Assembly: GCF_032444005.1 (NCBI RefSeq)
Contig: NC_091286.1
Location: forward strand, 167,400,001 to 167,464,000
From: Ranitomeya imitator
Lineage: Eukaryota
Direction: 5' to 3'
Length of the DNA stretch: 64,000 nt
The notes beneath the pieces are model-generated. The model saw only the letters and a list, made by a program, of their open reading frames with translations, made no database searches and was not told the origin of the DNA. Positions within the stretch are counted from its first letter, which is position 1, and every line of letters starts with the position of its first letter. A program made the translations under genes and the position numbers. This document shows, one piece after another, positions 6,620 to 46,662 of the stretch.

Positions 6620-7023
6620 CTGGAAGGAAGTCTTGATGCTGGAGGACATCCCAATGTGTCTGAGGGGAGAGGGAGAGGAGGGGGGGTGGGGAGAAAATAG
6701 AGAGGGAAGAAACAGAAAGAGTGGGAAGGTGTAGAGAATTTAAAAAGACAATACATAATGAGAAGAGTCATAACATAACACTCAACCGAGTGCATCATCT
6801 CTGGAATGCAGCTGGAAATAATAATCATTGCCAGCTAGAAGAGGCAATTTAATAACAATAAACACAACGTATCTAATCTTAGAACTATTGTTCTGTGTAT
6901 CAACGTGAACCTACACAATGGAGTGAGATCAAAACAGTGGGGTGTAAAAGGACGGTATTAGGGATATCTATCAGTGATCCCTAGACTGTTAACAACGGAG
7001 GCAGATCCGTCTCTTCAGGTTTC

Positions 7024-8821
7024 TTAGTCCTTGGTGTGAGTGGACCTGGATACTTTACGCTTAGTTTTCTGGGACCTGGGAGTGGAGACCGGCTGCCATG
7101 GGATGGGGCTAGGGAGGGGTTGTAGCATTGAGGCTGCATGGAAGGACTCAATGTCGGGATATTGGTCAAGGGAGATGTTCAGTTCTTTACAAATCTTCTG
7201 GATGTCTGCTGAAGATCTTGCTTGCAGTCTTTTGTCTTCAGTAATGATTTGTATTCCGAATGGGTACAGCCAGCGTTACTGAAGTTTTTTCTGGAGAATT
7301 GCCTCGGTGAATGGTTTGAGCAAAAATCGCTTCCTCAGGGTAATTGCAGAGAGATCTTGAAAAAGTTTGAGGCATGTGTCTTCAAATTTGATGTCTTGGG
7401 CCTCCCTTGCCCGTTTTAGTATCAGATCCTTAGTACGGAAGTCCAGGAACCTGCACAGTACATCTCGGGGTGGATCCCCCTGTTTAGGCTTAGGGCGAAG
7501 CGCCCTGTGTATTCTAACTATTTCAATGCCTTGGGGGTCATGATCTAGAAGCAGGGAGCGGAAGATCTCGGTAGCAGCCTTGGTAAGGGCTTCAGAAGCG
7601 ACAGACTCCGGCAAACCTTTTATCCGGATATTATTTCTCCGCTCACGGTTTTCATGGTCTTCAAGTGTGCATTGGACCATATTATTATTATTATTATTAT
7701 TTATTATTACAGCGCCATTTATTCCATGGCGCTTTACATGTGAGGAGGGGTATACATAATAAAACAAGTACAATAATCTTGAACAATACAAGTCACAACT
7801 GGTACAGGAGGAGAGAGGACCCTGCCTGCGAGTGCTCACAATCTACAAGGGATGGGTGAGGATACAGTAGGTGAGGGTAGAGCTGGCCGTGCAGCGGTTT
7901 GGTCAATCGGTGGTTACTGCAGGTTGTAGGCTTGTCGGAAGAGGTGGGTCTTCAGGTTCTTTTTGAAGGTTTCGATGGTAGGCGAGAGTCTGATATGTTG
8001 TGGTAGAGAATTCCAGAGTAGGGGGGATGCACGAGAGAAATCTTGTATGCGATTGTGGGAAGAGGAGATAATAGGGGAGTAGAGAAGGAGATCTTGTGAG
8101 GATCGGAGGTTGCGTGCAGGAAAGTACCGGGAGACGAGGTCGCAGATGTATGGAGGAGACAGGTTGTGGATGGCTTTGTATGTCATGGTTAGGCTTTTGT
8201 ACTGGAGTCTCTGGGTGATGGGGAGCCAGTGCAGGGATTGACAGAGGGGAGAGGCCGGGGAATAGCGGGGGGACAGGTGGATTAGTCGGGCAGCAGAGTT
8301 TAGAATAAATTGGAGGGGTGTTAGAGGGGAGGCCACAGAGCAGGAGGTTACAGTAGTCAAGGCGGGAGATGATGAGGGCATGGACTAGGGTCTTTGCAGA
8401 TTCTTGGTTTAGGAATGTGCGGATGGAGCTGATCCTCTTGAGCTTTAATGCAGGACAGAATAGCGTTAGAATATTCTATGGAGTTACTTTGTGAGCTCTC
8501 CAAGGCCTCAATTCCATGCCCCTGCTGTGTTATTTCTTGCTTAATATCTGTTAATTCTTTACCAATAGGTTCCAGGGCTTTGGATAGGATGCGTTTGATA
8601 AAGGAACGGGTTACCGGGTGTTCCTTGCCCCCAGAGCCCATATCAGAGTCACTTTCCATGTCGGAATCTGTTTCTCCTTCCGTGGCTAGGTTGGATGGGT
8701 AGTTTGTTTTAATCACACTGGGGATAGAGACTCGTTTTTTTAGATATTTGTCTAGATCCGATTGTGCGGCTAGCGAACTAGTTTTAGTTGGCTTGGGTGT
8801 TTTGATGTTAGATCTGACCAT
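7024..8821 (-). pseudogene. L1 ORF1, split by an L2 insert, with one nonsense codon
   Basis: RRNNIRIKGLPE and IHRALRPKP...PRDVLCRF motifs. Removing 7681-8422 restores the frame QEDQLHMVQCTLEDHENR. TAA at 7276-7278 sits where L1 ORF1 has the Y of Y-x-W. Confidence 0.88.
7681..8422 (-). mobile_element. 5'-truncated L2 LINE
   Basis: C-terminal ORF2 sequence LNSAARLI...LHWLP...LWNSLP...FKKNLKTHLF, then a 3' UTR and (AAT)n tail. Confidence 0.9.
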
Positions 8822-11964: not shown

Positions 11965-12295
11965 GAAACCCTAATCCAAACACACCCCTAACCCCAATTC
12001 CAACAGTAACCCTAACCACACCTCTAACCCTGACACACCCCTAACCCTAATCCCAACCCTATTCCCCACTGTAAATGTAATCTAAACCCTAACTGTAACT
12101 TTAGCCCCAACCCTAACCCTAACTTTAGCCCCAANNNNNNNNNNNNNNNNNNNNNNNNNNNNNNNNNNNNNNNNNNNNNNNNNNNNNNNNNNNNNNNNNN
12201 NNNNNNNNNNNNNNNNNNNNNNNNNNNNNNNNNNNNNNNNNNNNNNNNNNNNNNNNNNNNNNNNNNNNNNNNNNNNNNNNNNAACCCTAGCCCTA
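11965..12295. repeat. Degenerate (CCCTAA)n telomere-like tract containing a 148-N assembly gap (12135-12282)
   Basis: CCCTAA, CCCTAG and CTTTAGCCCCAA variants. The same tract occupies the same position in the other copies. Confidence 0.9.
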
Positions 12296-23241: not shown

Positions 23242-25830
23242 TGTTCCAATAAATACATTTCTTTTTCTACCGTAATTAAAAAAAAATAAAAGTACACATT
23301 TAGTATCGCCACATCCGAAAGGACCCGACCTATAACACTGTCCCACTAGTTAACCCCATAAGTGATCACCGTAAAAAAAGAGGCAAAAAACAACGCTTTA
23401 TTATCATACTGCCCAGCAAAAAGTGGAATAACACGCGATCAAAAAGACTGTTATAAATAAACATGGTACCGCTGAAAATGTCATCTTGTCCCGCAAAAAA
23501 CTAGCCGCCATACAGCATTATCAGAAAAAAAAGTTATAGTCCCCAGAAGCAAAAATAATTATTTTTTATATAAAATAGATTTTATCGTATAAAAGCGCCA
23601 AAACATAAAAAAATATAAATGAGGTATCGCTGTAATCCTACTGACCCGAAGAATAAAACTGCTTTATCAATTTTATCAAACGTGGAATGGTATGAATGCC
23701 CCCCCCCAAAAGAAATTCACAAATTGCTGGTTTTTGTTCATTCTGCCTCGCAAAAATAGGAATAAAAAGTAATCAAAAAAAGTAACATGCCCGAAAATGG
23801 TACCAATAAAAAACATCAACTCGTCCCGCAAAAAACAAGACCTCACATATGACTCTGTGGACCAAGGTATGGAAAAATTATAGCTCTCAAAATGTGGAGA
23901 TGCAAAAACTATTTTTTGCAATGAAAAGCGTCTTTTAGTGTGTGACAGCTGCCAATCATAAAAATCCCCAAAGAAACTCGCAATCAAAGTAAATCAAACC
24001 CCCCTTCATCACCCCCTTAGTTGGAGAAATATAATAAAATTGTAAAAATTTATTTATTTCCATTTATCCATTAGGGTTAGGGTTGGGGCTAAAGTTAGGG
24101 TTAGGGCTACAGTTATGGTTAGGGTTTGGATTACATTTACGGTTGGGATTAGGGTTAGGGGTGTGTTTGGGTTAGGGTTTCAGTTGGAATTGGGGGGTTT
24201 CCACTGTTTAGGCACATCAGGGGCTCTCCAAACGCGACATGGCGTCCGATCTCAATTCCAGCCAATTTTGCATTGAAAAGTCAAACGGCGCTCCTTCCCT
24301 TGCGAGCTCTCCCGTGCGCCCAAACAGGGGTTTACCCCAACTTATGGGGTATCAACGTACTCAGACCAAATTGGACAACAACGTTTGGGGTCCAATTTCT
24401 CTTGTTACGCATGGGAAAATAAAAACTTGGGGGGCTAAAAAATCATTTTTGTGGGAAAAAAATTATTTTCACGGCTCTCCGTTATAAACTGTAGTGAAAC
24501 ACTTGGGGGTTCAAAGTTCTCACAACACATCTAGATAAGTTCCTCAGGGGGTCTAGTTTCCAATATGGGGTCACTTGTGGGGGGTTTCTACTGTTTAGGT
24601 ACATCAGGGGCTCTGCAAACGCAATGTGACGCCTGCAGACCATTCCATCTAAATCTGCATTCCAAACAGCGCTCCTTCCCTTCCGAGCTCTGCCATGCGC
24701 CCAAATGGTGGTTCCCCCCAAGTTCCCTAGGGGGTCTACTTTCCAAAATGGTCTCTCTTGTGGGGGTTTCAATGTTTAGGCACATCGGGGGCTCTCCAAA
24801 CGCGACATGGCGTCCTATCTTAATTCCAGTCAATTTTGCATTGAAAAGTCAAATGACGCTCCTTCCCTTCCAATCCATGCGCCCAAACAGTGGTTTATCC
24901 CCACATATGGGGTATCAGTGTGCTCAGGACAAATTGCACAACATCGTTTGGGGTCCAATTTCTCCTGTTACCCTTAGTAAAATAAAACAAATTGGAGCTA
25001 AAGTAAATTTTTAGTGAAAAAAGTTAATGTTCATTTTTTTTCTTTTTTAAACATTCCAAAAATTCCTGTGAAACACCTGAAGGGTTAATAAACTTCTTGA
25101 ATGTGGTTTTGAGCACTTTGAGTGGTGCAGTTTTTAGAATGGTGTCACACTTGGGTATTTTCTATCATATAGACCCCTCAAAGTGACTTCAAATGTGATG
25201 TGGTCCCTAAAAGAAAAATGGTGTTGTAAAAATGAGAAATTGCTGGTCAACTTTTAACCCTTATAACTGCCTAACAAAAAAAAAAATTTGGTTCCAAAAT
25301 TGTGCTGAAGTAAGTAGACATGTGGGAAATGTTACTTATTAAGCTTTTTGTGTGACATAACTCTGTGATTTAAGGGCATAAAAATTCAAAGCTGGAAAAT
25401 TGCAAAATTTTCAAAATTTCTGCCAAGTTTCTGTTTTTTCCCCACAAATAAACGCAGGTAATATCAAAGAAATTTTACCACTAACATGAAGCACAATATG
25501 TCATGAGAAAAGTGTCAGAATCACTGGGATCTGTTGAAGCGTTCCCGAGTTATAACCTCATAAAGGGACATTGGTCAGAATTTTAAAAATTGGCCCGGTT
25601 ATTAACGTGCAAACCACCCTTGGGGGTAAAGGGGTTAATATTCCTGATAAGCTCACTAATTCTGACTTTCAGTGGGCTTTTTGTACAACCCACATACAGC
25701 TTGTCGCATGGGCATTTAATGAGATAGATAACACCCTCTGTAGAGCATGAAATAAAGTTTTTAATTTTATATTCTTTGCCATCCTTAGTAATTCCCAGTT
25801 TCTTGCGGGTTTTGGTCTGGTGGCACATTC
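22280..25830 (-). mobile_element. Penelope-like 3' fragment (GIY-YIG), split by copy C
   Basis: SCSTEGVIYLIKCPCDKLYVGCT...IRNI|KQKFLNHPLLKHF rejoins across TTAA. A hammerhead-like motif lies at 22283-22316. Confidence 0.82.
22599..25634 (-). mobile_element. piggyBac-like non-autonomous element, complete copy C (3,036 bp)
   Basis: TTAA at 22595-22598 and 25635-25638. Both ends start CCCCTTT. Reverse complement of copy B; contains (CA)n at ~23184-23231. Confidence 0.9.
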
Positions 25831-26205: not shown

Positions 26206-27043
26206 GGAGCCTACACCTTTTCCAGGACATGACAGCGGGTCTGATCAGCTGTCATGTGCCCAGAACAGCCGCGGGTATCATTGCAATTCACTAGCGGCTG
26301 TGAACATGTTAAATGCCGCTGTCAAACTCTTGACAGCGGCATTTAACATGCACGTGCAGGGAGCGCGTCATGTCCCCATAAAACCCATACCCAAATAAAT
26401 ACACAGGACACAGATATCACAGTGGCATAAAATTGGCCGTGCGGTTTTATTCAGGGTTACATAAAATACCTTAAATATTTCCAATAAATAAACTTCCATA
26501 AAATAAATTCAAATTCTCCAAATTTCCAAATGTCCAAATCCACCCATACATGGGTGATTTTTCCCCACAATTAAAACCACACGACAGGATGAATGACGAT
26601 ATAGAGGGAGGGAGGGTGGGCTCTTCTTTAATCTTGCGTCAGCAACTGAGGCGCTCAGAACCGCCAGTCAGGTTAAATATTTGAAAAAAGACCGCCAAAA
26701 ACGCTCTCCACCAATGAGAATTCAGCAAACTTGCCGCTCAAAAACTGATTGAAACCAGATTGTCACGAATCTACCACAGATTCTGACATTACAATAACAT
26801 CATAAAAATGCATAAAATAGTTCCCAATAAAATGGACAGAGCAGGGTCTATGAGGACATGAGACCCCCGCTATACTGCTTTATGTCTTGAGCGGGGGGGC
26901 TTACATGTCCCCATAAAACCCATACCCAAATAAATACACAGGACACAGATATCACAGTGGCATATAATTGGCCGTGCGGTTTTATTCAGGGTTACATAAA
27001 ATACCTTAAATATTTCCAATAAATAAACTTCCATAAAATAAAT

Positions 27044-27717
27044 TCAAATTCTCCAAATTTCCAAATGTCCAAATCCACCCATACATGGGTGATTTTTCCC
27101 CACAAGGCCGAGACTAAACAAGTCGAGGCCCCCCCCCCCCCCCCCCCCCCCACCGCACAGCCATTTTTCAGTTATGCTGCCCATATTTAAATTAAAAATA
27201 TCCAGACCAATATTGGATAAGTGAATCAAATCCTGTCTAAACATCCCGGGTAGAAACCCCTCCAAATCTTCGTGCCTAAAAGAAAAGCCACCCAACAAAG
27301 GAAAAAATTTCATCATGGCACGGTTCACCCTCTTACGAATTTTATCCAGAAATAAAAATTGCTGTTGTTGCCAAAAGAGTCTGGGAATGATCTCAGAAAA
27401 AACAAGGCTTGAAAAAGGAAAATTTTGCCTCAAAAATATAAGATCAGACCTCATGGTCGCTAACAGATCAAGCGTATTGATTTTACCCAGATCATTACCA
27501 GCAAGATGAATAATAATTAAATCCGGGTAAGGAAATTTCAACATGCAGTTGTTTAACTCAGGAACTAAGGAAGCCCACTTCAATCCTCGAATGCTATGCC
27601 AGAAGACCTGAGTAATAGAAGGGTTAAATGATAAATTCTCCGAATAGGACCGCTGACTAGCCCTCTTCTGGGCCCAGAAAACAAATGAGTGGCCAACAAT
27701 CCAAACAATAGTTGGAC
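27044..27717 (-). CDS. SGNH/GDSL hydrolase-like ORF of the Ngaro element (no ATG; begins at a putative splice acceptor)
   Basis: Frame is open from 27718: block I WIVGHSF, block II RGLKW, block III HLAGNDL, block V QDLIH. Confidence 0.85.
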
Positions 27718-27735
27718 CTAAAAGAGAATAAACGA

Positions 27736-28599
27736 TTAGTCAGCATATAAATTATGACGAACATACAGTTTGAAACGGTTAGAGTTCCATCTACCCATTT
27801 TTTTGATTTTAGCATCGGACAAACCGGCCCTAGCGGCCTCCGTAGCTGCACCAATCCTAAAAGAATGGGAAGATATTTTGAGGTGACTTTTACCCAAAAA
27901 GGAAAGGCATTTCTTGAGGATAAAATTAAACTGAAATATCGTCACTGGTGACTTATCCCTGTGTATGAACAATGGGCCCTGCACCGCAGGCCTATTAACA
28001 ATCCATTTTGAAAAATGAAGAACCTGGCAAATAGTAGGATCATAAAATGAATTCAAGCGAATTTCACTACCCCTTCCTAACTGATCGGTTTTAGATTTCC
28101 TTATAAACACTAAGAGGGATGAATCGCATAGCTTAACGTCCTCTAGTCTGAGCCCAGATGGTTCTGCTTTTTTAAAGGATACTATCTCGCTCACTCTAAG
28201 AGCTCCAAAAAAACAGATGGAAAAAATGGCATTAAATAATAAAGCTTCCTCCGAATTCGAACAAACACTAGTCAGCGCTGAGCAAATGCTTATCAATAAC
28301 GAAAATGAGATAGGGCGTCTGGAATCTGGTAAAAAATTTTCATGTTTCAGGCCTTTCAAAAACTGTTTCACGAGAAAAAGGTCAGTTAGAGCAGTTCTCC
28401 CATGAACCTTAAAAAAAAAGGAAACTCCTGCGAAGCATTTCGCCACTGCAGAGTAAGATAAGTTCTTCTTGAGTAAGGACTCCGCAAATTGTAAGGCCAC
28501 GAAAGGATCAGACACCAATACTTCAAAACCATGCAAAACACAAAAATCAGTCCACTTCTTCCATGCGGCTGAATAATCAGCCCATGATCGTTTGGACAA
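27736..28599 (-). CDS. Tyrosine recombinase
   Basis: FFGALRVSE (R), RKSKTDQ (K), SHSFRIGAAT (HxxR) and GRWNSNRFKLY (W, Y). No upstream ATG. Confidence 0.93.
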   Translation of the reverse strand: MSKRSWADYSAAWKKWTDFCVLHGFEVLVSDPFVALQFAESLLKKNLSYSAVAKCFAGVSFFFKVHGRTALTDLFLVKQFLKGLKHENFLPDSRRPISFSLLISICSALTSVCSNSEEALLFNAIFSICFFGALRVSEIVSFKKAEPSGLRLEDVKLCDSSLLVFIRKSKTDQLGRGSEIRLNSFYDPTICQVLHFSKWIVNRPAVQGPLFIHRDKSPVTIFQFNFILKKCLSFLGKSHLKISSHSFRIGAATEAARAGLSDAKIKKMGRWNSNRFKLYVRHNLYAD

Positions 28600-28622
28600 T
28601 GAATTTTATATAAAATACGGTA

Positions 28623-30534
28623 CTAAGCTGAGATCACATCCCAGACTGAGGGAGGACAAAACGTTGCTTCTTTGTCCGCTAATGGAACATGTTGGAAAAA
28701 ATTAATCCACTGACTATTCAAAATTAGCTCCGTACAATTACTAATATTGCTAACACCCACTTTTGCCTTCAACCAAACGTTATTTTTTAAACATAATAAA
28801 ACTAATTGCCTCAGAATTTTTGCGGCCCAAAGGTTCTTTGAAGAAAGGGTATTGATAGCAAAAACCACCGCCTGGTTTGAAGAATTTAACAAAATTCTTG
28901 AATTCTGCAATTCGTTGCCCCAAAGAAAAATGAGTGAAAAAATCGCGAAGAGCTCTATGAGCAGGGAGTTATTAATGACCTTAACAAAATTACAATCGTC
29001 AGGCCAACTCAAGTGAACCCAGTGTGAAGAAAATAAAAGACCGACGCCTAAGGAAACCTCCGCCGAAAAGGCCAGCGGAATGGAATCTGCATTGATAAAA
29101 GGAGACTGAATAACAGATCTGCCATTAAAGTCAGCCAAGAATAAGAGCCAAATTCTTGCATCCTCCTTAAGATCCGATCGGACCCTGATGTGGGACTTAG
29201 GTGAAGAAAACCCCTTAGTAGCTTCGTAAAGACTTCTAGAAAATACACGGCCCATTGGGATAACCCGAAGGGCGAAATTAAGAAGGCCCAACAAAGCTTG
29301 CAAATCCTTGAGGATAATGTTTTCCTTAGACAAAAATTCCGAAAGAGATGCTCGCAGTTTAGCAACCTTTGCCTCAGGCAAAATAGCTACCATTTTTTCT
29401 GAGTCAATTAAAATACCTAAAAATTCAATCTGACTACATGGGCCGACTGTCTTATCGTGGGCGATGGGAACTCCAAAGTGAGCACACAAACGTAAGAAGC
29501 TGTCCAAGGTATCCTTACATGCGCGAGAATGAGGAGGACCCACAAAAAGGAAATCATCCAGGTAGTGCAAAATACCAGCCTCTACACAGCTGGATTGCAA
29601 TACCCAATGTAGAAAAACAGAAAAAGATTCAAAATAAAAGCAAGACAAAGAAAAGCCCATTGGAAGGCACCTATCAAAGAAAAAACAGTTATCAAACTGA
29701 AAACCCAAAGAATTGAAACCCATAGGGTGAACTGGTAAGAGCCTAAAAGCCGATTTAATATCGGATTTAGCCATCAAGGAAAAAGGGCCAAATTTTCTTA
29801 GAAGATCTAACGCGCCGTCAAAAGAAGAATAGGATACTGAACACAGATCCTTATCCACTTTGTCGTTTAGGGACTGACCCGGTGGATACGATAGATGGTG
29901 GATTAACCGAAACGAACCAAAATCTTTTTTAGGAACCACCCCTTGGGGCGAAATGCGACAATTCAAGAAAGGAGGGGACGAAAAAGGGCCAGCCACCCTA
30001 CCAAATTCTAACTCGTTAGAAATTTTTTCCCTAACAACTTCGGGAAAAGCGAAAACAGATGATACATTTTTTTACTAAAGTGCAACCTTTCCCTTCAAAA
30101 CGAGGAACAAAAAAACCGGAATAGAACCCATCATAAAGGAGACGACTAGTCTCCTTGTTTGGGAATTTGCTTAGCCAATAGACCATATTTTCCAGAATCA
30201 CTGGCGTCCGAGCCTTTTGGGTTAGAATCCCTAATTGAAGATTGCTGAGCTGCTTGCTTCTTAAAACACTTGGACATGGGGTGGGGGTTACCGCAGAACG
30301 AGCACTCATGCCTAAACCTACAGTTGTTGTTCCACTTGCAAAAAGACTCGTTGAAGGCGAAGCAGACGCCTTTTTTAGGAAAGGAATTAACCGATTGCCT
30401 GCTAACCACATTTCTCGATGGCAGCATGAGGTTAATCCACAAGCCAATGTCCTTAGTACCCCACTTGACCTCCGGGTGAACTGAAAGTTTGTGTCTAAAT
30501 GCCTCATCATAGTGAAGCCAAGCAGTACCTCCAA
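28623..30534 (-). CDS. Reverse transcriptase + RNase H-like domain; one 1-nt frameshift in the homopolymer at ~30067-30073
   Basis: VVPKK...FRLIHHLS, KSDIKSAFRLL, LPMG and HYLDDF. Removing one A joins LVKNVSSVFAFPEVV...AGPF. Confidence 0.9.
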
Positions 30535-31066
30535 AATTCCTATAGGCTTCTAAAATGATGTCGACGTGCTGAAACAGGCTGCTGCAAAGATTAGGGGATT
30601 TTTCCCCCAAAACTGCAGCATATATAGCAAAAGCCTGTATCCAATTGTTAAAAGATCTAATGTTACGTTTACTGTCATCAGAGTCAGCCCTATCATCTTT
30701 TTTATCTGACTTGGGGGGCTGATCTCTGCGAGGCAGGAGAGAAAATAGATCAATATAATTATTGTTACAAATAAGCTCCTTCACCGAAGAGCTTAAGTGA
30801 AAACCAAGGGGCGACAGTTCGCACATAAGTGCCTCCTTAAAAGGATTCAAAGGGGTAAGACCAAGGGCAGGCGCTTCTGAAGGTAAAGAAATGCTAGCAG
30901 ATACTAAAGGAGAAGGGAGACCCACATTACCCATGGTCTCACATATAACCGATTTAATAAGTTCCTTCAATTGATTGTGAGGAAAAGGGAAGTTAGTTAA
31001 CTCACCCTTTGAATGCAGAACGTCTCGGCGTCGCTCTCCAGAGCCACTTGCGCTCAAGCCCACCAT
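30146..31066 (-). CDS. Gag-like ORF with C-terminal zinc-finger motifs
   Basis: SFNNWIQAFAIYAAV, WLHYDEAFR and CFAFN...CRFRHECSFCGNPHPMSKC. Confidence 0.88.
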   Translation of the reverse strand: MVGLSASGSGERRRDVLHSKGELTNFPFPHNQLKELIKSVICETMGNVGLPSPLVSASISLPSEAPALGLTPLNPFKEALMCELSPLGFHLSSSVKELICNNNYIDLFSLLPRRDQPPKSDKKDDRADSDDSKRNIRSFNNWIQAFAIYAAVLGEKSPNLCSSLFQHVDIILEAYRNFGGTAWLHYDEAFRHKLSVHPEVKWGTKDIGLWINLMLPSRNVVSRQSVNSFPKKGVCFAFNESFCKWNNNCRFRHECSFCGNPHPMSKCFKKQAAQQSSIRDSNPKGSDASDSGKYGLLAKQIPKQGD

Positions 31067-31614
31067 AATAGGTGAGCGCGGCTCTCTGAGAGAATTTGCT
31101 TGGGGATCATCTTTTCTTCGGAGGACTGTGTAGCAACAGCTGGAGCCGGCCTTCCTTGCTGTGCCGGAGCAAAGATGGCCGCTCTGGAGCGAGAAGAGGA
31201 GGGGACCGCGGCGCTTTTACGGCCCTGCCCCTCACCTGACCTTCCGGATCCTTCATATGACGGCGAAAGTTCACGCTGAGGGCACCGGCTGAGATCCCGC
31301 ACCGGGCTGCGGGATTTGTCTGAGGTGCAGCGACGCGGCTTCTTACCGGCGTCCCGAGCGCTACGCCTGGGAGTCGCAGAACCCGCAGCTGCAGACGGCA
31401 CAGACCTAGACTTCCTGGGACAAGTTCCGGAGCTTGAATCAGTCACAGCAGCAGGTACAGGGCTTGGCAACGGAGGAAGGGGCTCTGGAACCGGAGGGGG
31501 AGGAATGGCTTCGGAGGCTGATGGCAAGGGACTCATAGCCAGACAGCTTTTTAACCAATCCAGGCCGTTTTCACCCCCGGTCCTGGCTAGAAGCTCCTGC
31601 ATAAGCTTCTCCAT
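31054..31614 (-). CDS. Pro/Ser/Arg-rich ORF, probably the frameshifted N-terminus of gag/ORF1
   Basis: ATG lies 14 bp inside repeat A1. Overlaps the gag frame, which is open about 130 nt upstream of its own ATG. Confidence 0.6.
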   Translation of the reverse strand: MEKLMQELLARTGGENGLDWLKSCLAMSPLPSASEAIPPPPVPEPLPPLPSPVPAAVTDSSSGTCPRKSRSVPSAAAGSATPRRSARDAGKKPRRCTSDKSRSPVRDLSRCPQRELSPSYEGSGRSGEGQGRKSAAVPSSSRSRAAIFAPAQQGRPAPAVATQSSEEKMIPKQILSESRAHLLWWA

Positions 31615-32902
31615 GACAGCGCGGTATCTCTTCTTTAATCTTGCGTCAGCAACTGAGGCGCTCAGAACCGCCAGTCAGGTTAAATATTTGAAAAAAGACC
31701 GCCAAAAACGCTCTCCACCAATGAGAATTCAGCAAACTTGCCGCTCAAAAACTGGTTGAAACCAGATTGTCACGAATCTACCACAGATTCTGACATTACA
31801 ATAACATCATAAAAATGCATAAAATAGTTCCCAATAAAATGGACAGAGCAGGGTCTATGAGGACATGAGATCCCCGCTATACTGCTTTATGTCTTGAGCG
31901 GGGGGGCTTACATTACCTCCTCCCATCGGCACCCATGTCACATGACCGCGGGTCGCCGATGGGTTGGCATGACATCCCGGGGTCAGGAGAAAACCCTGTG
32001 GTTGTCATTGCTGGATCGCTTTGAGCGCCGCATGGTGGTTGGCGCTCATAGCGAGTGAGCATATCTGCTACATATAGAAGGGCTGCAGCCCTGCTCTGTA
32101 GCAGAGCCAATCAGACAAATAAAGCTTCTAGCCTCCCATGGAGACTATTGAAGCATTCAGAAGTTTTAAAAAAAAGTTTTTAAAAATCTTAAAAAATATA
32201 TAAAAGTCTTAAGTCACCCCCCCATTTGCCCCATTCAAAATAAACCAATGAAAAAAAAAATCAAATATACACATATTTGGTATCGCCGCGTTCAGAATCT
32301 ATCAACATAAAAAAATAATCCAATCGGTAAACGTTGTAGCAAGAAAAAGATTGAAATACCCGTAATTACGTTTTTTTTGGTTTTCAATAGATCATATCTG
32401 CACCAAAGTGGTATCCTTAAAAACGTCAGCTCGGCACACAAAACATAAGCCCTCACCTGGCCCCAGATCCCGAAAAATGGAGACGCTGCGGGTCTTGGAA
32501 AATGGCAATTTTTTTTTTTTATATACTAACTTTGGATTTTTTTTCACCACTTAGATAAAAAAGAACCTTGACATGTTTGGTGTCTATGAACTCGTAATGA
32601 CCTGGAGAATCATAATCACAGGCCAGTTTTAGCATTTAGTGAACCTAGCAAAAATAGCCAAACAAAAAACAAGTGTGGGGACTGCACTTTTTTTTCAATT
32701 TCACCACACTTGGAATATTTTGCCCATTTTCTTTTACACGACATAGTAAAACCAATGTCATTCTAAAGTACAACTCGTCCTGCAAAAAATAAGCCTTCAC
32801 ATGGCCATTTTGACCAAAAAATAATCGTTATGGCTCTGTGAAGAAGGGGAGCAAAAAATGAAAATGGAAAACCAAAAATACCCCTGGTCGTTAAGGGGTT
32901 AA

Positions 32903-33540: not shown

Positions 33541-36021
33541 CCGTGATTTTTGCTTTTTAAGACGCACCTGATTATAAGACGCACCTAGATTTTAGACAGG
33601 AAAATAAGGAAAAAATATTTTGATCCAAATAGTGTGCAAAAACCTTTCATAAAATACAAAAATATTATCTGTGGATGACGCTCTGTTATGGGGGATCTGT
33701 GAATTACAGTACTGTGCCTGCAGTACCGTATATTGTGATTATCGCCCCCTCATCCTCAGGTTACACCCACTTACTGTATACATGGATGTATTCTGAAAGA
33801 TAAGGGAGGTGGTAGTCACATTTGCAATAAACACTTTGGACACTACATTACAGTGTATATACTAAATATGGCTAGAACCCCCATCATCCTACAGAATATA
33901 CCCATTGATACAGTATATTCTGAAGGATGATGGGGGTTGTTTTCTCACCTTTGCTAAAAGGATCTCACTAGGGTTGAGCGAAACGGGTCGGCCAGATTCA
34001 GAAGTCGCCGACTTTTGGCAAAGTCGGGTTTCATGAAACCCGACCCCTGTGTGGGGTCGGCCATGAGGTCGGCGATCTTCTGAATCTGGTATCGGAATTC
34101 CGATACCGAGTTCCGATATGTTTGCGATATCGGAAATTGGTATCGGAATCCATATTTAAGTGTAAAATAAAGAATCAAAATAAAAAATATTGATATACTC
34201 ACCCTCGGACGCGCCCTGGTACTAACCGGCAGCCTTCCTTCCTAAGAATGAGTGCCTGAAAGGCCTTCTGTGACGTCGCGGCTTGTGATTGGTCGCGTGA
34301 CCAATCACAAGCCGCGACGTCATCGAAGGTCCTTCAGTCGCTCATTCTTAGGAAGGAAGGTTGCCGGTGAGAACCAGGGTGCGTCCGAGGGTAAGTATAT
34401 CAATATTTTTTATTTTGATTCTTTATTTTACACTTAAATATGGATCTCAGGGCCTGAAGGAGAGTTTCCTCTCCTTCAGACCCTGGGAACCATTAGAAAC
34501 CCAATGCACTGCATTGGGTTTCGGCCGACCCCCGACCCCGACTTTTCTATAGGATCGGCCGATTTCACTCGACCCGACTTTTGAAAAAGTCGGGTTTCGT
34601 GAAACCCGACCCGATCCTATAAAAAGAAAAGTCGCTCAACCCTAGATCTCACACTTGTGAGTACCGTAGTTGCAACATTAAATAGTGTGCAGAGACAGAT
34701 ATGTGATTGGTGGAGGCAGCTCAGCAACAGTTCCCTCCACCAATCACTATCCATCCCTGCAGAGGAAGAGGAGAATCACTCTTCTCAACCTCCTCAGGTT
34801 TAGGCCTCTTTGACACATCTGTGTCTCCAGTACATGTGGTGACAATTTTCACACGTACCGGAGACACTGACAAAGGTAGACCCATTCAAATGAATGGGTC
34901 TGTGCACATGTCAGTGTGTTCCAAAGCACCGTGTGCCCCACACGTAGACATGTCCATTTTTTACTGTCAACACAGGCGGCAAAACGTTCCACACACGTGC
35001 ACACTGAGAACACTCATGGATGTCATCAGTGTGACACGCATCGGCACCGGTGAATAAGCGCTACAGTAAGCTCTTCTATGGTGCCGGGTGCTCTCATACT
35101 CCTGTGCTCTGCCGGCGATCGGCGCAAGCAGAGGAGAATGAGTTCTATTCAAGTCAGAACAATAACCGCAGGCGGGGGCTTTTTGGACTATTACTCCCAT
35201 CAACATACACCTGCTGCCGCTAATGGCAGAAGCAGATGATGGGGGTATTCCTCACCCGCCGCCTGTGTTATAACTAAATGAATGAAAACCCTCAGCTGTC
35301 AGCTTCCGCAAGGTTGTTATCAAGAATAGAGGGGTTCCCACGCCTTATTTTTAATTAAATAATTTTAAAAAACTTGTGGGGTCCCCCCCATTTTTGACAA
35401 CCAGCATTGCTAAAGCTCACATCTGGGAGCTGGTATTTTCAGGCTGGTAAGGGGCCATGGATATTGCCCCCTCCCCAGCTTAAAAATATCAGCCCACAGC
35501 TGCCCAGAAAAGGCGCATCTATTGGATGCGCCAATTCTGGCGCTTTGCCCGGCTTTTCCTACTTGCTCTGTAGCGGTGGCAAGTGGGGTTCATAATTGTG
35601 GGGTTGATGTCACCTGACAATACATAGATGCTTGATGCATGGGCTTGATGCCCACTGCTTAGTAATGGAGAGGCGTCGATGAGACACCTATCCATTACTA
35701 ATCCTATAGCTATATGGTAAATAAAGACACAGCCAGAATAAAATCCTTTAATTGAAAAAATGACACATATTACTTTAATAATCTCAATAAAAGCATACTT
35801 ACGCCCTCGCCTAATTCCACCAAAGCCCTGATCTCCTTTAATAAAAGTAAAATAAATAAACAACAATATACCATACCTGTCTGTTCTGTCCCTCGCCGCT
35901 GTACCACCACTGCAACTCCCGCAGCATAGGTAATAATAATGTTTGGTTTATAAGACTCATGCCCATTTCCCCCCTAATTTTGGGGATCATAAAAGTGCGT
36001 CTTATATAGCGAAAAATACGG
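33541..36021. mobile_element. Tc2/pogo-like non-autonomous element with TA TSD
   Basis: Imperfect TIRs CCGTGATTTTTGCTTTTTAAGACGCAC / CCGTATTTTTCGCTATATAAGACGCAC. TA at 33539-33540 and 36022-36023. Confidence 0.8.
33969..34644. mobile_element. hAT MITE, 676 bp
   Basis: TIR TAGGGTTGAGCGA and perfect 8-bp TSD GATCTCAC (33961-33968, 34645-34652). Confidence 0.92.
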
Positions 36022-37274
36022 TATTTGATCCCGTACCAACCATCAAGAGTTGTGGCTCCTACAGGCCAGTTAGACGCTCATAATCAACTTGTTACCTGCA
36101 TTAAAGACAGCTGTCTTACATAGTCACCTTTATAAAAGACTCCTGTCTGCAGACTCCATTAATCAGTCAGAATCTAACCTCTACAACATGGGCAAGTCCA
36201 AAGCGCTTTCTAAGGATTCCGGGGACAAGATCATAGACCTGCACAAAGCTGGAATGGGCTGCAAAATCATAAGTAAGACACTGGGTGAGAAGGAGACAAC
36301 TGTTGGTGCAATAGTAAGTAAATGGAAGAAATACAAAATGACTGTCAATCGACATCGATCTGGGGCACCATGCAAAATCTCCCCTTATGGGGTATCCTTG
36401 ATCATGAGGAAGGTGAAAGATCATCCTAAAACTACACAGGGGGAACTTGTTAATGATCTCAAGGCAGCTGGGACCACAGTCACCAAGGAAACAATTGCTA
36501 ACACATTATGCCGTAAAGGTTTAAAATCCTGCAGTGCCCACAAGGTCCCCCTGCTCAAGTAGGCACATGTGCAGGCCTGTCTGCAGTTTGCCAATGAACA
36601 CCTGGATGATTCTGTGAGTGATTGGGAGAAGTTGCTGTGGTCAGACGAGACAAAAATTGAGGTCTTTGACATTAACTCTACTCACCGTGTTTGGAGGAAG
36701 AGAAATGCTGCTTATGACCCAAAGAACACCATCCCCACTGTCAAGCATGGAGGTGGAAACATGTTTTGGGGGCGTTTCTCTGCTAAGGGCACAGGACTAT
36801 TTCACCGCATCATTGGGAGAATGGATGGAGTCATGTACCTTCTCTCCACCAGGACATTAAAAATTGGTCGTTGCTGCGTCTTCCAACAAGACAATGACTC
36901 AAAACATACAAAGGAGTGGCTCAAAAAGAAGCACATTAAGGTCATGGAGTGGCCTAGCCAGTCTCTAGACCTTAATACAATAGACAACTTATGGAGGGAA
37001 TTGAAGCTCCGGATTGCCCAGCGACAGCCTCAAAATCTTAATGATTTAGAGATGATCTGCAAAGAGGAGTGGACCAAAATTTCTCCTGACATGTGCGCAA
37101 ACCTCATCATCAACTACAAAAAAACATCTGACTGCTGTGCTTGCCAACAAAGGTTTTGCCACCAAGTGTTAAGTGTTGTTTGCCAGAGGGATCAATTGCT
37201 CATTTCTCACTGCAAAATGCAAACACATTTATATAATTTATACGATGTGATGATTTTCTGGATTTTATTTCTGA

Positions 37275-37407
37275 TACTATAGATGGAGGCCCAATGCTAT
37301 CACATCGGGAAGGTGGTGACGTGCCGATGGGGGCAAGCTGCAAAGCCTGCCCCCATCGGCACGTCACCACCCACTCGATGCGATAGCATCAGGCCTCCAT
37401 CATAGTA
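37275..37407. repeat. 133-bp foldback (about 60-bp arms, 12-nt loop), probably a tiny MITE
   Basis: GATGGAGGCC..ATGCTATC.CATCG....GGTGGTGACGTGCCGATGGGGGCA is mirrored. TA at both ends. Confidence 0.75.
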
Positions 37408-42700: not shown

Positions 42701-44582
42701 TCGGCGGTATGATAATAAAGGTTGTTTTTTGCCTCGTTTTTTTTTCTTACGGTGTTTACCGAAGGGGTTAACTAGTGGTCCAGTTTTATAGGTTGGGTCG
42801 TTACGGACGCGGCGATACTAAATATGTGTACTTTTATTGTTTTTTTTTATTTTATTTAGATAAAGAAATGTATTTATGGGAATAATATATATATATATTT
42901 TTTCATTATTTAGGGCACTTGGTAAGCCACCTCCCTCCCTGCAGGACCCGGATGCCGTGGCCATCTTGGATCCGGGCCTGGATCAGGGAGGGAGGTAAGG
43001 AGACCCTCACAGCAACCCTGCGCGATGCTTCCCTGTACCGCCGGCACACCGCGATCATGTTTGATCGCGGTGTGCCGGGGGCGGTCCATGACCGCTCCTG
43101 GTTCATTGCGCCGGATGTCAGCTGCGATAGGCAGCTGACACCCGGCCGCGATCGGCCGCGCTCCCCCCGTGAGCGCGGCCGATCGCGCTGGACGTACTAT
43201 TCCGTCCTTGGGAAGTAGGGCCCACCCCACATGGACGGAATAGTACGTCCAGTGGCAGAAAGGGGTTAAAGACTCCATAATAACAGGGTCTGTACCACAG
43301 GACTGGCGTATAGCAAATGTAGTGCCAATATTCAAAAGGGGGCAAAAACTGAACTCGGAAATTATAGGCCAGTAAGCTTAACCTCTACTGTGGGTAAAAT
43401 CCTGGAGGGCATTCTAAGAGATGCTATGCTGGAGTATCTGAAGAGGAATAACCTCATGACCCAATATCAACATGCGTTTACTAGGGACCGTTCCTGTCAG
43501 ACAAATCTGATCAATTTCTATGAACAGGTAAGTTTCGGACTGGACCAAGGGAATGCAATGGACGTAGTGTATATGGACTTTTCAAAAGCTTTTGATACGG
43601 TGCCACACAAAAGGTTGATACATAAAATGAGTGTAATGGGGATAAGGGAAATTATGTGTAAGTGGGTTAAGAGCTGGCTCAGGGATAGGAAACAAAGGGT
43701 GGTTATTAATGGAGCACACTCGGACTGGGTCGCGGTTAGCAGTGGGGTACCACAGAGGTCAGTATTGGGCCCTCTTCTTTTTAACATATTTATTAATGAC
43801 CTTGTAGCGGGCTTACAGTGCAGAATTTCAATTTTTGCAGATGACACTAAACTCTGCAGGATAATCAATACAGAGGAGGACAGTTTTATATTACAGGATG
43901 ATTTATGTAAACTAGAAGCTTGGGCTGACGAATGGCAAATGAGCTTTAATGGGGATAAATGTAAGGTCATGCACTTGGGTAGAAGTAATAAGATGTATAA
44001 CTGTGCTTAATTCTAAAACTCTGGGCAAAACCGTCAATGAAAAAGACCTGGGTGTATTGGTGGTTGACAAAATCACATTTAGTGGCCAGTGTCAGGCAGC
44101 TGCTACAAAGGCAAATAAAATAATGGGATACATTAAAAGAGGCATAGATGCTCATGAGGAGAACATAATTTTACCTCTATACAAGTCACTAGTTCGACCA
44201 CACTTAAAATACTGTGTACAGTTCTGGTTTCCGGTGTATAAGAAAGACATAGCTGAACTAGAGCGGGTGCAGAGAAGAGCGGCCAAGGTTATTAGAGGAC
44301 TGGGGGGTCTGCAATACCAAGATAGGTTATTACACTTGGGGCTATTTAGTTTGGAAAAACGAAGGCTAAGGGGTGATCTTATTTTAATGTATAAGTATAG
44401 GGGACAGTACAAAGACCTTTCTGATGATCTTTTTAATCATAGACCTAAGACAGGGACAAGGGGGCATCCTCTACGTCTGGAGGAAAGAAGGTTTACGCAT
44501 AACAGACGCGGGATCTTTACTGTAAGAGCAGTGAGACTATGGAACTCTCTGCCGTATGATGTTGCAATGAGTGATTCATTAC
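39712..44582 (+). mobile_element. CR1 LINE ORF2 fragment, split by copy B and ended by a T2 arm
   Basis: KSPGPDGIHP, LIF|KDSIITGSVPQDW across TTAA, DFSKAFDTVPH, SGVPQ.SVLGP, FADDTKL and ERVQRRA. Confidence 0.92.
40167..43265 (+). mobile_element. piggyBac-like non-autonomous element, complete copy B (3,099 bp)
   Basis: TTAA at 40163-40166 and 43266-43269. About 3 array units (40820-41820) and a CCCTAA tract (~41830-42045). Confidence 0.92.
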
Positions 44583-44586
44583 TTAA

Positions 44587-44745
44587 AGGGAACCTGTCAC
44601 CTGAATTTGGCGAGACCGGTTTTCGGTCATATGGGCGGAGTTTTCGGGTGTTTGATTCACCCTTTCCTTACCCGCTGGCTGCATGCTGGCCGCAATATTG
44701 GATTGAAGTTAATTCTCTGCCCTCCGTAGTACACGTCTGCATGAA
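44587..44745. mobile_element. T2/Kolobok-type MITE, left arm only
   Basis: TTAA|AGGGAACCTGTCAC. Confidence 0.7.
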
Positions 44746-44777
44746 TGAATATTATTAGCAGAATAAATTTCAGGCTA

Positions 44778-46662
44778 ACACAAAAGGAAAAAAAAAAAAA
44801 AAATGGAGAGAAACCAGCTCACCTACTAGGCATTTGTTGTGGGGGAAGCCCGGATGCCGTGCAGTCTTCACGTGAAACAATAGAACAAAATAGAAGAGAA
44901 AATCCAGCTTCCAAAAATATCCAATTTATTAAAGTTAAAATCCAAGGTCCAAAAACATGGTTCACAGGAGAGGAGATAGCAGCATGCTACGCGTTTCGAA
45001 CACTAGGTTCTTTTTCAAAGCTGCCTACTATGCACCAGAATGAGGTTTAAATAGCAACTGTGACCAATCACAGTGAATTAATCCACACCTGATACATCAG
45101 TAATTATATACAATAAAAACGCAATAATATTGCAAAAGAGAAAAACAAAGAAAATATATAATACAGACATATAAAAAACATATAATATAACTAAACAGCA
45201 TTGATCTCTCAGTAATGAAACATGATTTCCTTGCGAGCATTTAAACCCATGGGATAGCAAGTGTTAAGGCAAAACATCCAGTAGGCTTCACGCGTCATTA
45301 AGCGTCTTTTCAGATCTCCTCCTCTGGCTGTTATCAGAAGCTTTTCAATGCCGACAACCCGAAGGAATGCAGTATCTCTTTGATGACTGATAATAAAATG
45401 CTTAGAGGCGTGAGACATAGAGCGATTATTATTAGTAGAAACAACAATGTCAGTGATATGTTCAGAAATACGCGTCTTTAACATGCGAGTAGTGCAACCT
45501 ATATAACTTAAATTACATTTAATGCATGTTATCATATAAACTACATTCTTACTATTGCAGTTAATAAATTGCTGAATTTTGTGTTCATGTCTGTTACTAC
45601 TATCAGTAAAGGAATGCATAACAATGGAATGCGCACATGTGCGACATTTAGAAGCACCACAATGATAAAAGCCTTTATGATGTAACCATGTGTGGGAGAC
45701 CTTGCTAGATTTAAATAGGCTGGGTGAAAGAATATCAGACAAAGTGGTAGCCTTTTTTGCAATCACCTGACAGCCTGAAGACAGAATTTTGGAGAGAATC
45801 TCATCCTCATAAAGAATAGGAATGTTTTTCAAAATAAGAGATTTGATGTTATTGTATTGAGGACTGTATTTAATGGAGCAGAAATTTTTTTGGTTTTGAT
45901 GCAATTTACTCTTATTTTTAGATAACAGCATGTCACTGCGTTTTTTATGTTGTACTATATTTTTGGCTCTATCCAGAGACCAATTAGAGTAGCCTCTTTT
46001 TTTCTAATTTTTTACAACACAAATCAGTCTCTTGCTTTAAAATGCTAGCATCACTACAATTTCTGGTTATTCTAGTCAGCTCACCCACTGGTATAGACTT
46101 TATTGTATGTCCAGGATGACTGCTGGACGCATGTAAAATACTATTACCAGATAAAGGTTTATGAAATGTGGAAGTGGCAATACCAGAGCCAACAGTACTA
46201 TGCAGCATCAAGTCCAAAAAGGAAATCATGTGTGAATTATGGCTGCATGTAAAACAAAGATTAAATTCATTAGAATTGAGATAACTGAGGAACTCCGGTA
46301 TGGTAGATTCATCGCCACTCCATATGAGGAGCAAATCATCGATATATCTACCATACCAGAATATGTCCATCAAAAATGGATTACGATCCGAATAAAGAAA
46401 TAATTCCTCCCAATATGACATTACCAAATTAGCAACGGATGGTGAATGTTTGCCTCCCATAGAAACTCCTTTACATTGGAGAAAAAACTGCTATTTAAAC
46501 CTCATTCTGGTGCATAGTAGGCAGCTTTGAAAAAGAACCTAGTGTTCGAAACGCGTAGCATGCTGCTATCTCCTCTCCTGTGAACCATGTTTTTGGACCT
46601 TGGATTTTAACTTTAATAAATTGGATATTTTTGGAAGCTGGATTTTCTCTTCTATCTTGTTC
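44778..46662 (-). mobile_element. 5'-truncated Penelope-like element with inverted 5' pLTR copy and 14-bp TSD
   Basis: RT MGGKHSPSVANL...RYIDD; GIY-YIG NVVYMITC..CNLSYIGCT. TAAATTTCAGGCTA at 44764-44777 and 46663-46676. 46490-46664 is the reverse complement of 44881-45055. Confidence 0.92.
46521..46560 (+). ncRNA. Candidate minimal hammerhead ribozyme, U3:A8 core variant (second copy on minus at ~44985-45024)
   Basis: UUGAAAA-A-GAAC/CUAGU/GUUC-GAAA-CGCG-UA. Helix I register is imperfect. Confidence 0.55.

What the first reader, a model, noticed from the sequence alone, without database searches (positions are those of the whole stretch)
28623..29110. RNase H of the young Ngaro element lacks three of four catalytic acidic residues but keeps an open frame
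Seen: where DIRS/Ngaro RNase H normally has TDAS, LEL, xDN and ADxLS, this ORF reads FSAEVS, IELF, NSSNQAVV and NCTELIL, so only the Glu remains. Fold-level neighbours (GxG, HW..SWP, LWG, LRQLVLLCL, QW..F) persist with no stops. RT (YLDD) and YR catalytic residues are intact, and the repeats are about 99% identical. Inferred: the changes are too many for recent decay, so this looks like a lineage with a pseudo-RNase H that relies on host RNase H or a helper element. The alignment was done by eye.
Basis: partly seen in the sequence, partly recalled or inferred. Interest (0 to 1): 0.7.

Follow-up and report, generated by a model that had tools for sequence, protein, structure and literature searches.

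The report
Ngaro retrotransposon with dead RNase H
A recently inserted Ngaro-type jumping gene carries an RNase H domain that keeps its fold but has lost two of the four acidic residues needed to cut RNA; this happened before the insertion, and poison-frog Ngaro elements lost the same residues independently and have kept the dead domain under selection.

Summary
A 121-sequence alignment puts the RNase H catalytic quartet (DEDD in 108 of 120 relatives) at window pol residues 311, 348, 373 and 423, which read S-E-S-E. Two Asp are lost to Ser, through multi-step codon changes. The fourth is a conservative Asp to Glu, not a loss. The domain still models as an RNase H fold (pLDDT 91.8).

The RT-RNase H frame is open, but the copy is not intact: pol is broken upstream at an A7 run and gag is split.

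The split direct repeats differ at 3 of 488 bases. The RNase H changes hit 15 of 38 near-invariant columns, against 5 of 93 in RT, so they predate the insertion. Neutral decay is very unlikely to have left 162 codons open.

No close relative of this element exists in any collection searched, so the claim that it is a lineage cannot be tested directly.

Independent Ngaro lineages in dendrobatid frogs lost largely the same active-site columns. They keep the dead domain under purifying selection (dN/dS about 0.14) and have inserted recently.

Best reading: a pseudo-RNase H kept for a structural role, with RNA removal supplied by the host or in trans.

The parts
26369..31913 (-). Whole Ngaro-type tyrosine-recombinase retrotransposon (5545 bp), the only copy in the window
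   Evidence: Repeat layout A1-internal-B1-A2-B2. ORF order is gag, RT-RNase H, YR, ORF4.
31628..31913 (-). Split direct repeat A1 (5' end of the element)
   Evidence: 286 nt, 2 mismatches to A2.
26621..26906 (-). Split direct repeat A2
26904..27105 (-). Split direct repeat B1 (overlaps the end of ORF4)
   Evidence: 202 nt, 1 mismatch to B2.
26369..26570 (-). Split direct repeat B2 (3' end of the element)
31054..31614 (-). N-terminal piece of gag (Pro/Ser/Ala-rich)
   Evidence: Its first 30 residues match the start of the single 484-aa gag of relative L004. It lies in a different frame from the next piece.
30146..31066 (-). C-terminal piece of gag with a Cys/His knuckle
   Evidence: 52% identity to L004 gag residues 255-479.
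30031..30534 (-). ORF holding the conserved N-terminal segment of pol, out of frame with RT
   Evidence: tblastn with P0003 and P0036 splits into two frames.
30067..30073 (-). A7 homopolymer where the pol reading frame breaks
   Evidence: Three-frame translation and DNA. Relatives are continuous here.
28623..29996 (-). RT-RNase H ORF, 457 aa, open
   Evidence: Pfam RVT_1 E=3.7e-8. 1267 homologues, best 52% identity.
29553..29564 (-). RT motif C, YLDD
28626..29111 (-). Pseudo-RNase H domain (pol residues 296-457)
   Evidence: AlphaFold2 pLDDT 91.8 with RNase H topology. Foldseek top hits are HIV-1 RT RNase H and archaeal RNase HI. No Pfam RNase H hit, unlike 63 and 28 of the other 107 domains scanned.
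29064..29066 (-). Catalytic position 1: Ser311 (codon TCG) where 114 of 120 relatives have Asp
28953..28955 (-). Catalytic position 2: Glu348, retained
28878..28880 (-). Catalytic position 3: Ser373 (codon TCA) where 113 of 120 relatives have Asp
28728..28730 (-). Catalytic position 4: Glu423 where 109 of 120 relatives have Asp
27736..28599 (-). Tyrosine recombinase ORF with R135, K170, H245, R248, W271, Y279
   Evidence: Pfam Phage_integrase E=1.5e-7. Alignment A3. Codons.
27044..27739 (-). ORF4, SGNH-hydrolase-like (GHS, GND and DxxH strings), open frame without an ATG
   Evidence: 37% identity to ORF4 of L004. Frame shown. The equivalent ORF of frog element L001 hits Lipase_GDSL_2 weakly. 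The window's own ORF4 has no Pfam hit.

Best explanation
The region is the RNase H domain of a single, recently inserted Ngaro-type tyrosine-recombinase retrotransposon. It is a pseudo-enzyme. The RNase H fold is kept, but the two Asp that hold the catalytic metal ions are Ser and the fourth carboxylate is Glu. The surrounding active-site motif residues (TDAxG, DN, PGxxNxxADxLSR) are replaced as well.

This state was inherited from the element's source lineage, not acquired in place. It evolved while selection kept the domain open and folded, most likely because the RT needs the domain as a structural or nucleic-acid-positioning module, as retroviral RT uses its connection domain (inferred). 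The RNA strand of the cDNA hybrid would then be removed by host RNase H1/H2 or by the RNase H of another element (inferred, untested).

The copy in the window is itself no longer intact, because gag and pol carry frame breaks. It records the lineage and is not a working element.
For: Shown:
- The quartet is S-E-S-E against DEDD in 108 of 120 relatives.
- Both Ser codons need at least two nucleotide steps from Asp.
- The model has high confidence and RNase H topology. The four positions sit in strand 1, helix A, the end of strand 4 and the last catalytic helix. Foldseek top hits are all RNase H.
- Departures from near-invariant columns: RT 5 of 93, RNase H 12 of 29. On a fixed topology the RNase H branch is 2.97 against 0.61 for RT, a ratio of 4.9 where the median is 1.4.
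- The repeats differ at 3 of 488 bases, so only 1-2 changes are expected in the domain since insertion.
- Simulated neutral decay that changes about 40% of residues leaves no stop in about 2% of runs. With an assumed indel rate the joint probability falls below 1e-5.
- 12 of the window's 15 lost near-invariant columns are also lost in the independent frog GEKN clade (Fisher p=5e-5). The Trp, Gly and Pro core columns are kept in all of them.

Parallel evidence that such lineages live:
- The frog GEKN elements share the dead quartet across dS of at least 1.4, with RNase H dN/dS 0.12-0.15.
- One family has three independent insertions in Ranitomeya variabilis. They are 99.0-99.7% identical, encode an identical 606-aa pol, and in the copy checked (L001) all four ORFs are open.
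Against: - Only one copy of the window's family could be examined, so selection on its RNase H is inferred from pattern, not measured.
- This copy has frame breaks in gag and pol, so it could descend from a defective, trans-mobilised source.
- The AlphaFold model leans on an alignment of catalytically intact relatives, so it cannot prove that this sequence folds.
- Glu313, two residues after Ser311 on the same strand, and Glu423 leave room for some altered metal site.
- No biochemical data exist.
Confidence: 0.6

Rival explanations
1. Ordinary decay: this is a dead copy and the RNase H changes are random damage accumulated after insertion.
For: The copy does carry frame breaks in gag and pol, and ORF4 lacks an ATG. 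Single catalytic changes are common among database fragments.
Against: - Repeat divergence of 0.6% allows about 1-2 changes in the domain.
- 15 near-invariant columns are changed, and two codons need multi-step changes.
- RT and YR are conserved within the normal range.
- There is no stop in 457 codons.
Confidence: 0.05
2. A non-autonomous lineage that is mobilised wholly in trans by RNase H-competent Ngaro elements of the same genome. Its RNase H is simply unselected, and the frame is kept open only because downstream YR expression needs pol to be translated to its end.
For: - The copy is defective in gag and pol.
- All other members of the window's 18-member clade are DEDD and could include helpers.
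- The YR frame begins close to the pol stop.
Against: - RT is not accelerated. Its terminal branch of 0.61 equals that of its neighbour P0007, and it departs from 5 of 93 columns.
- The YR catalytic residues are all kept.
- The losses in RNase H are concentrated in the active-site shell while core residues are kept, which an unselected spacer would not show.
Confidence: 0.2
3. The domain is still an active nuclease with a rebuilt metal site, for example using Glu313, Glu348 and Glu423.
For: Glu313 lies two residues after position 311 on the same strand, so it faces the same side. An acidic residue persists at position 423.
Against: - No acidic residue lies near position 373 (NSSNQ).
- The flanking substrate and metal motifs (G314, N419, S426, R427) are also gone.
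- In E. coli RNase HI the first three carboxylates are each essential (established knowledge; not tested here).
Confidence: 0.1
4. Alignment artefact: a correct alignment would place Asp or Glu at all four positions.
Against: - Three independent alignments (MAFFT on 21 and on 121 sequences, hmmalign to a 108-sequence profile) give the same columns.
- Invariant Trp, Gly and Asn anchors flank every catalytic column.
- The secondary-structure positions fit the RNase H topology.
Confidence: 0.03

Closest known systems
Canonical Ngaro elements of amphibians and fish (for example DIRS-53_XT and DIRS-54_XT of Xenopus; PMC9210276)
   Same: A1-internal-B1-A2-B2 split direct repeats. ORFs for gag, RT/RNase H and tyrosine recombinase, plus an extra SGNH-hydrolase-like ORF after YR. 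No methyltransferase hit in Pfam.
   Different: The RNase H catalytic quartet is S-E-S-E instead of DEDD, and the neighbouring active-site motifs are replaced. No family member closer than about 52% identity was found.
Retroviral connection ('tether') domain and the degenerate gRNH of plant Tat LTR retrotransposons (PMC4408406)
   Same: An RT-linked RNase H fold whose DEDD residues have degenerated while the domain is kept, presumably for a structural or regulatory role.
   Different: In those cases a second, active RNase H was acquired downstream. No second RNase H domain is detectable in the window element or in the frog element L001.
Non-LTR retrotransposons that lack an RNase H domain, such as mammalian L1, thought to use host RNase H (own knowledge, not checked here)
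   Same: A retroelement that replicates without its own RNase H activity.
   Different: There the domain is absent altogether. Here the fold is retained. The replication chemistry also differs: a tyrosine recombinase element versus target-primed reverse transcription.
Dendrobatid frog Ngaro families with dead RNase H, found here (P0030, P0040, P0044 with quartet GEKN; P0093, P0116, P0104)
   Same: Ngaro architecture, intact RT, and loss of largely the same active-site columns with the same core kept.
   Different: These are separate lineages on the RT tree with different replacement residues (Gly/Lys/Asn rather than Ser/Ser/Glu). For them, multi-copy status, recent insertion and purifying selection are shown. 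For the window element they are not.

Membership tests
Ngaro (tyrosine-recombinase retrotransposons, order DIRS) | Split direct repeats in the order A1 - internal - B1 A2 B2 | tested here: met
   A 31628-31913 / 26621-26906 and B 26904-27105 / 26369-26570 on the minus-strand element.
Ngaro (tyrosine-recombinase retrotransposons, order DIRS) | Reverse transcriptase of the DIRS/Ngaro type with its catalytic motifs | tested here: met
   RVT_1 E=3.7e-8. D79 and YLDD present. Nearest relatives are Ngaro-like pols with YR and hydrolase ORFs beside them.
Ngaro (tyrosine-recombinase retrotransposons, order DIRS) | Tyrosine recombinase with the R-K-H-R-W/H-Y residues, and no DDE integrase or protease | tested here: met
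   Phage_integrase E=1.5e-7. R135, K170, H245, R248, W271, Y279. No other Pfam domains in the element's ORFs.
Ngaro (tyrosine-recombinase retrotransposons, order DIRS) | No methyltransferase domain; in amphibians an SGNH hydrolase ORF after YR | tested here: inconclusive
   No methyltransferase hit. ORF4 is 37% identical to ORF4 of L004 and carries GHS/GND/DxxH strings, but it has no Pfam hit itself. The frog counterpart hits Lipase_GDSL_2 below the cut-off.
Active type 1 RNase H (RT-linked) | RNase H fold | tested here: met
   AlphaFold2 pLDDT 91.8 with strand-strand-strand-helix-strand-helix-helix-strand-helix order. Foldseek top hits are all RNase H, probability up to 0.98 but E=0.02 and TM 0.45-0.5.
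Active type 1 RNase H (RT-linked) | Four metal-binding carboxylates D-E-D-D | tested here: not met
   S311, E348, S373, E423.
Active type 1 RNase H (RT-linked) | Cleavage of the RNA strand of RNA:DNA hybrids | not testable with these tools
   Needs an enzyme assay.
Tether-plus-RNase H dual arrangement (retroviruses, Tat elements) | A degenerate RNase H fold followed by a second, catalytically intact RNase H | tested here: not met
   Pol ends about 35 residues after the degenerate domain's last helix. No RNase H family hit in any other ORF of the element.

The most novel reading that the evidence does not exclude
Ngaro retrotransposons can persist and transpose for long periods without their own RNase H activity. 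They repeatedly turn the domain into a conserved structural pseudo-enzyme without acquiring a replacement, so RNA removal during tyrosine-recombinase retrotransposition is outsourced to the host. The window element is one more independent instance of this. In the sample examined, every Ngaro pol from Ranitomeya or Dendrobates is catalytically degenerate across two to three lineages, which hints at a host-level cause.
Probability: 0.4. Interest if true: 0.7.

Novelty: new variant of a known kind. Interest (0 to 1): 0.55.

Why it matters
RNase H is regarded as a core activity of RT-bearing elements that make free cDNA. In the known cases where the RT-linked RNase H degenerated (retroviruses, plant Tat elements), a second RNase H had been acquired.

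A tyrosine-recombinase retroelement that keeps a dead RNase H fold with no replacement would be a different case, especially since this happened more than once. It would show that these elements can replicate on host RNase H, and that the domain has a second, non-catalytic job for the RT. That bears on the poorly understood DIRS/Ngaro replication cycle.

I found no paper in the searchable library that describes this for DIRS or Ngaro elements.

Tried and rejected
- Sequence search of the whole pol and of a 108-sequence RNase H profile against PDB chains gave nothing meaningful. Only fold comparison links the domain to solved RNase H structures.
- Pfam does not recognise the window's RNase H. 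A weak SUFU hit is noise.
- The search for closer kin failed everywhere:
  - whole pol word search, best 52%;
  - RNase H domain alone, for fragments, none;
  - exhaustive phmmer of the domain against 1.84 billion representatives, best 94 bits at 36-40% identity and no S-E-S-E;
  - metagenome and viral contig scans, none;
  - no second copy in the window.
- A programmed -1 frameshift at the A7 run was considered and rejected. The RT frame is +1 relative to the N-terminal segment, and relatives are continuous there.
- Host identification was attempted via the window's LINE ORF. It gave only about 34% hits, mostly anuran, so the host remains unknown, probably an amphibian.
- dN/dS for the window lineage could not be computed, because the nearest DNA is saturated at about 50% protein identity.
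- In the frog comparisons synonymous sites are near saturation (pS 0.64-0.92), so I rely on dN ratios and the one less saturated pair.
- The two gag pieces and the two pol pieces were searched apart and never joined.
- The N run at 12135-12282 was left alone.

Full report
**What is there**

The finding lies inside a 5545-bp element on the minus strand, window 26369-31913.
- Its repeats have the Ngaro layout. A1 (31628-31913) is followed by the coding region, then B1 (26904-27105), A2 (26621-26906) and B2 (26369-26570).
- A1 and A2 differ at 2 of 286 bases. B1 and B2 differ at 1 of 202.
- The ORFs in order are:
  - a gag in two pieces (31614..31054 and 31066..30146);
  - the conserved N-terminal segment of pol (in ORF 30534..30031);
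  - the RT-RNase H ORF (29996..28623, 457 aa);
  - a tyrosine recombinase (28599..27736);
  - an SGNH-hydrolase-like ORF4 (27739..27044).
- Pfam finds RVT_1 and Phage_integrase and nothing for RNase H.
- This matches the architecture described for amphibian Ngaro elements (PMC9210276).
- It is the only copy in the window.

**Checking the observation**

The quoted strings are present at pol residues 310, 347, 371 and 420. I aligned the ORF with 20 and then 120 homologues from the protein search.
- The four columns that read D, E, D, D in 108 of 120 relatives are S311, E348, S373 and E423 in the window.
- An independent hmmalign of 148 further representatives to a 108-sequence profile gives the same columns.
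- So two Asp are lost. The fourth is a conservative Asp to Glu.
- The Ser codons are TCG and TCA. Each is at least two nucleotide steps from any Asp codon.
- Homologous domains are recognised as RNase H by Pfam: RVT_3 in 63 and RT_RNaseH in 28 of the 108 domains scanned. The window's domain is not.
- An AlphaFold2 model built on that alignment has pLDDT 91.8 and the RNase H order of strands and helices.
  - Position 311 lies in strand 1, 348 in helix A, 373 at the end of strand 4 and 423 in the last catalytic helix.
  - Its best PDB matches are all RNase H (HIV-1 RT RNase H, archaeal and bacterial RNase HI), with modest scores: probability up to 0.98, E=0.02, TM 0.45-0.5.

**Open frame**

The 457-codon RT-RNase H ORF is open, but the copy is not intact.
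- The pol N-terminal segment, continuous with RT in relatives, lies in another frame. The break is at an A7 run at 30067-30073. The shift is +1, so a standard -1 programmed frameshift does not explain it.
- Gag is one ORF in relatives L004 and L001 but two frames here.
- ORF4 has no ATG.
- The YR frame has a stop just upstream of the listed ORF.
- These breaks may be real or may be homopolymer assembly errors.

**Recent decay or inherited state**

- The repeats differ at 0.6%, which is about 0.3% per copy since insertion. That predicts 1-2 substitutions in the 486-nt domain.
- Against that, the window departs from 12 of 29 near-invariant RNase H columns but only 5 of 93 RT columns. The median homologue departs from 1 and 2. 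None of the five RT departures is in a catalytic motif.
- On the fixed RT topology the window's terminal branch is 0.61 for RT and 2.97 for RNase H. The ratio of 4.9 compares with a median of 1.4.
- The tyrosine recombinase keeps R, K, H, R, W and Y.
- So the RNase H state predates insertion and is specific to that domain.
- In simulation, neutral decay strong enough to change about 40% of residues leaves 162 codons free of stops in about 2% of runs. With an assumed indel-to-substitution ratio of 0.1, the joint probability of an open frame is below 1e-5.

**Pattern of loss**

- Using 108 catalytically intact relatives as reference, 38 columns are at least 90% conserved, and the window departs at 15 of them.
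- Almost all of the 15 lie in or next to the active-site motifs: T310, D311, G314, L347, P351, D373, V391, G416, N419, A422, D423, S426 and R427.
- G317, G319, W326, W331, P332, W359, N382, L403, N406, F433, P438 and P448 are kept.
- This is what a pseudo-enzyme looks like. It is not what random damage looks like.

**Independent parallels**

- Eight of the 120 homologues depart from DEDD at one or more catalytic positions, seven of them at two or more, while their RT stays intact.
- On an RT-only tree the window sits in a well-supported 18-member clade whose other members are all DEDD. The other degenerate sequences fall elsewhere. At least three origins are forced by starred branches.
- All six sequences from Ranitomeya or Dendrobates in the sample are degenerate.
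- The GEKN clade (P0030, P0040, P0044) shares its dead quartet, although its members differ by dS of at least 1.4.
  - Its RNase H has dN/dS 0.12-0.15, against about 0.06 for RT.
  - Its RNase H-to-RT dN ratio is 2.3-2.75, against 1.7-1.9 in three DEDD frog elements.
  - Synonymous sites are near saturation, so these are rough figures, but constraint is clear.
- The exact 606-aa P0030 pol is encoded at three loci on two Ranitomeya variabilis chromosomes.
  - The three 7.1-kb elements are 99.0-99.7% identical and have the A-B-A-B repeats.
  - They have unrelated flanks, and all four ORFs are open in L001, the copy I checked.
- So a Ngaro lineage with a dead RNase H has lasted long and moved recently.
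- 12 of the window's 15 lost columns are the same as those lost in the GEKN clade (Fisher p=5e-5).

**What could not be done**

- No relative of the window's element closer than 52% (pol) or 40% (RNase H) identity exists in the collections searched: the word-indexed collection, 1.84 billion representatives read exhaustively, metagenome contigs and viral contigs.
- The claim that this particular element represents a multi-copy lineage therefore rests on inference from one copy.
- The host could not be identified. TE hits point weakly to an amphibian.

**Mechanism**

- Shown: loss of two metal-binding Asp and of the flanking motifs; retention of the fold-forming residues; intact RT and YR; no second RNase H anywhere in the element.
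- Inferred: the domain no longer cleaves hybrids; it is kept because RT needs it structurally; RNA removal comes from host RNase H or another element.
- The closest known analogue is the retroviral tether and the Tat gRNH, where DEDD degenerated after a second RNase H was gained (PMC4408406). Here no replacement is present.
- I found no description of this in the papers on DIRS and Ngaro that I could search.

**Verdict**

This is a real feature. It is partly as described and more interesting in context than as a single copy. I rate it a new variant of a known kind, with interest 0.55.

Noticed in passing
loci L001-L003, L005, L006 (Ranitomeya variabilis GCA_051348905.1, Dendrobates tinctorius GCA_039654945.1); proteins P0030, P0040, P0044, P0093, P0104, P0116: Every Ngaro pol from Ranitomeya or Dendrobates among the top 120 hits has a degenerate RNase H quartet (GEKN, ADKE, DEKT, GEGE), spread over two to three tree lineages. 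Five of the six have Lys at the third catalytic position. Hits from the sister family (Anomaloglossus) have no replaced catalytic residue (DEDD, or DED with the C-terminus truncated).
   Followed up: partly
window 30067-30073 and 31054-31066: Frame breaks in pol (at an A7 run) and in gag of an element whose repeats are 99.4% identical. These could be early decay or homopolymer assembly errors.
   Followed up: partly
window 27044-27739 (-): ORF4 has SGNH-like strings (GHS, GND, DxxH) and ends in a run of nine Gly. It has no ATG and runs into repeat B1.
   Followed up: partly
window 2545-7839 (-): LINE-type element: an endonuclease ORF (Exo_endo_phos, 5516-6058) upstream of a 621-aa ORF with the RT C-terminal half (2545-4410). 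Best database relatives are only about 34% identical, mostly anuran.
   Followed up: partly
window 43390-45931: RT ORFs on the plus strand (43390-44758; RVT_1 E=5e-27 in the first) next to a minus-strand ORF with a GIY-YIG domain (45209-45931). Possibly a Penelope-like element in a rearranged or head-to-head arrangement.
   Followed up: no
window 36569-37282 (+) and 59182-60197 (-): DDE_3 transposase remnants (Tc1/mariner type). The second is the better preserved (E=1.4e-19).
   Followed up: no
window 53571-54251 (-): A further reverse transcriptase fragment (RVT_1 E=2e-13).
   Followed up: no
window 34148-34445: Near-perfect palindrome: two 147-nt arms, 93% complementary, 4 nt apart.
   Followed up: no
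window 24190-25022: A cluster of dispersed or tandem direct repeats (112-148 nt units, 65-91% identical) about 1.3 kb beyond the element's 3' end.
   Followed up: no
window 12135-12282: A run of 148 N (gap or masked).
   Followed up: no
locus L001 3255-6290: The frog element's gag ORF is 1011 aa long and contains internal tandem repeats of about 96 nt. It has no Pfam hit.
   Followed up: no
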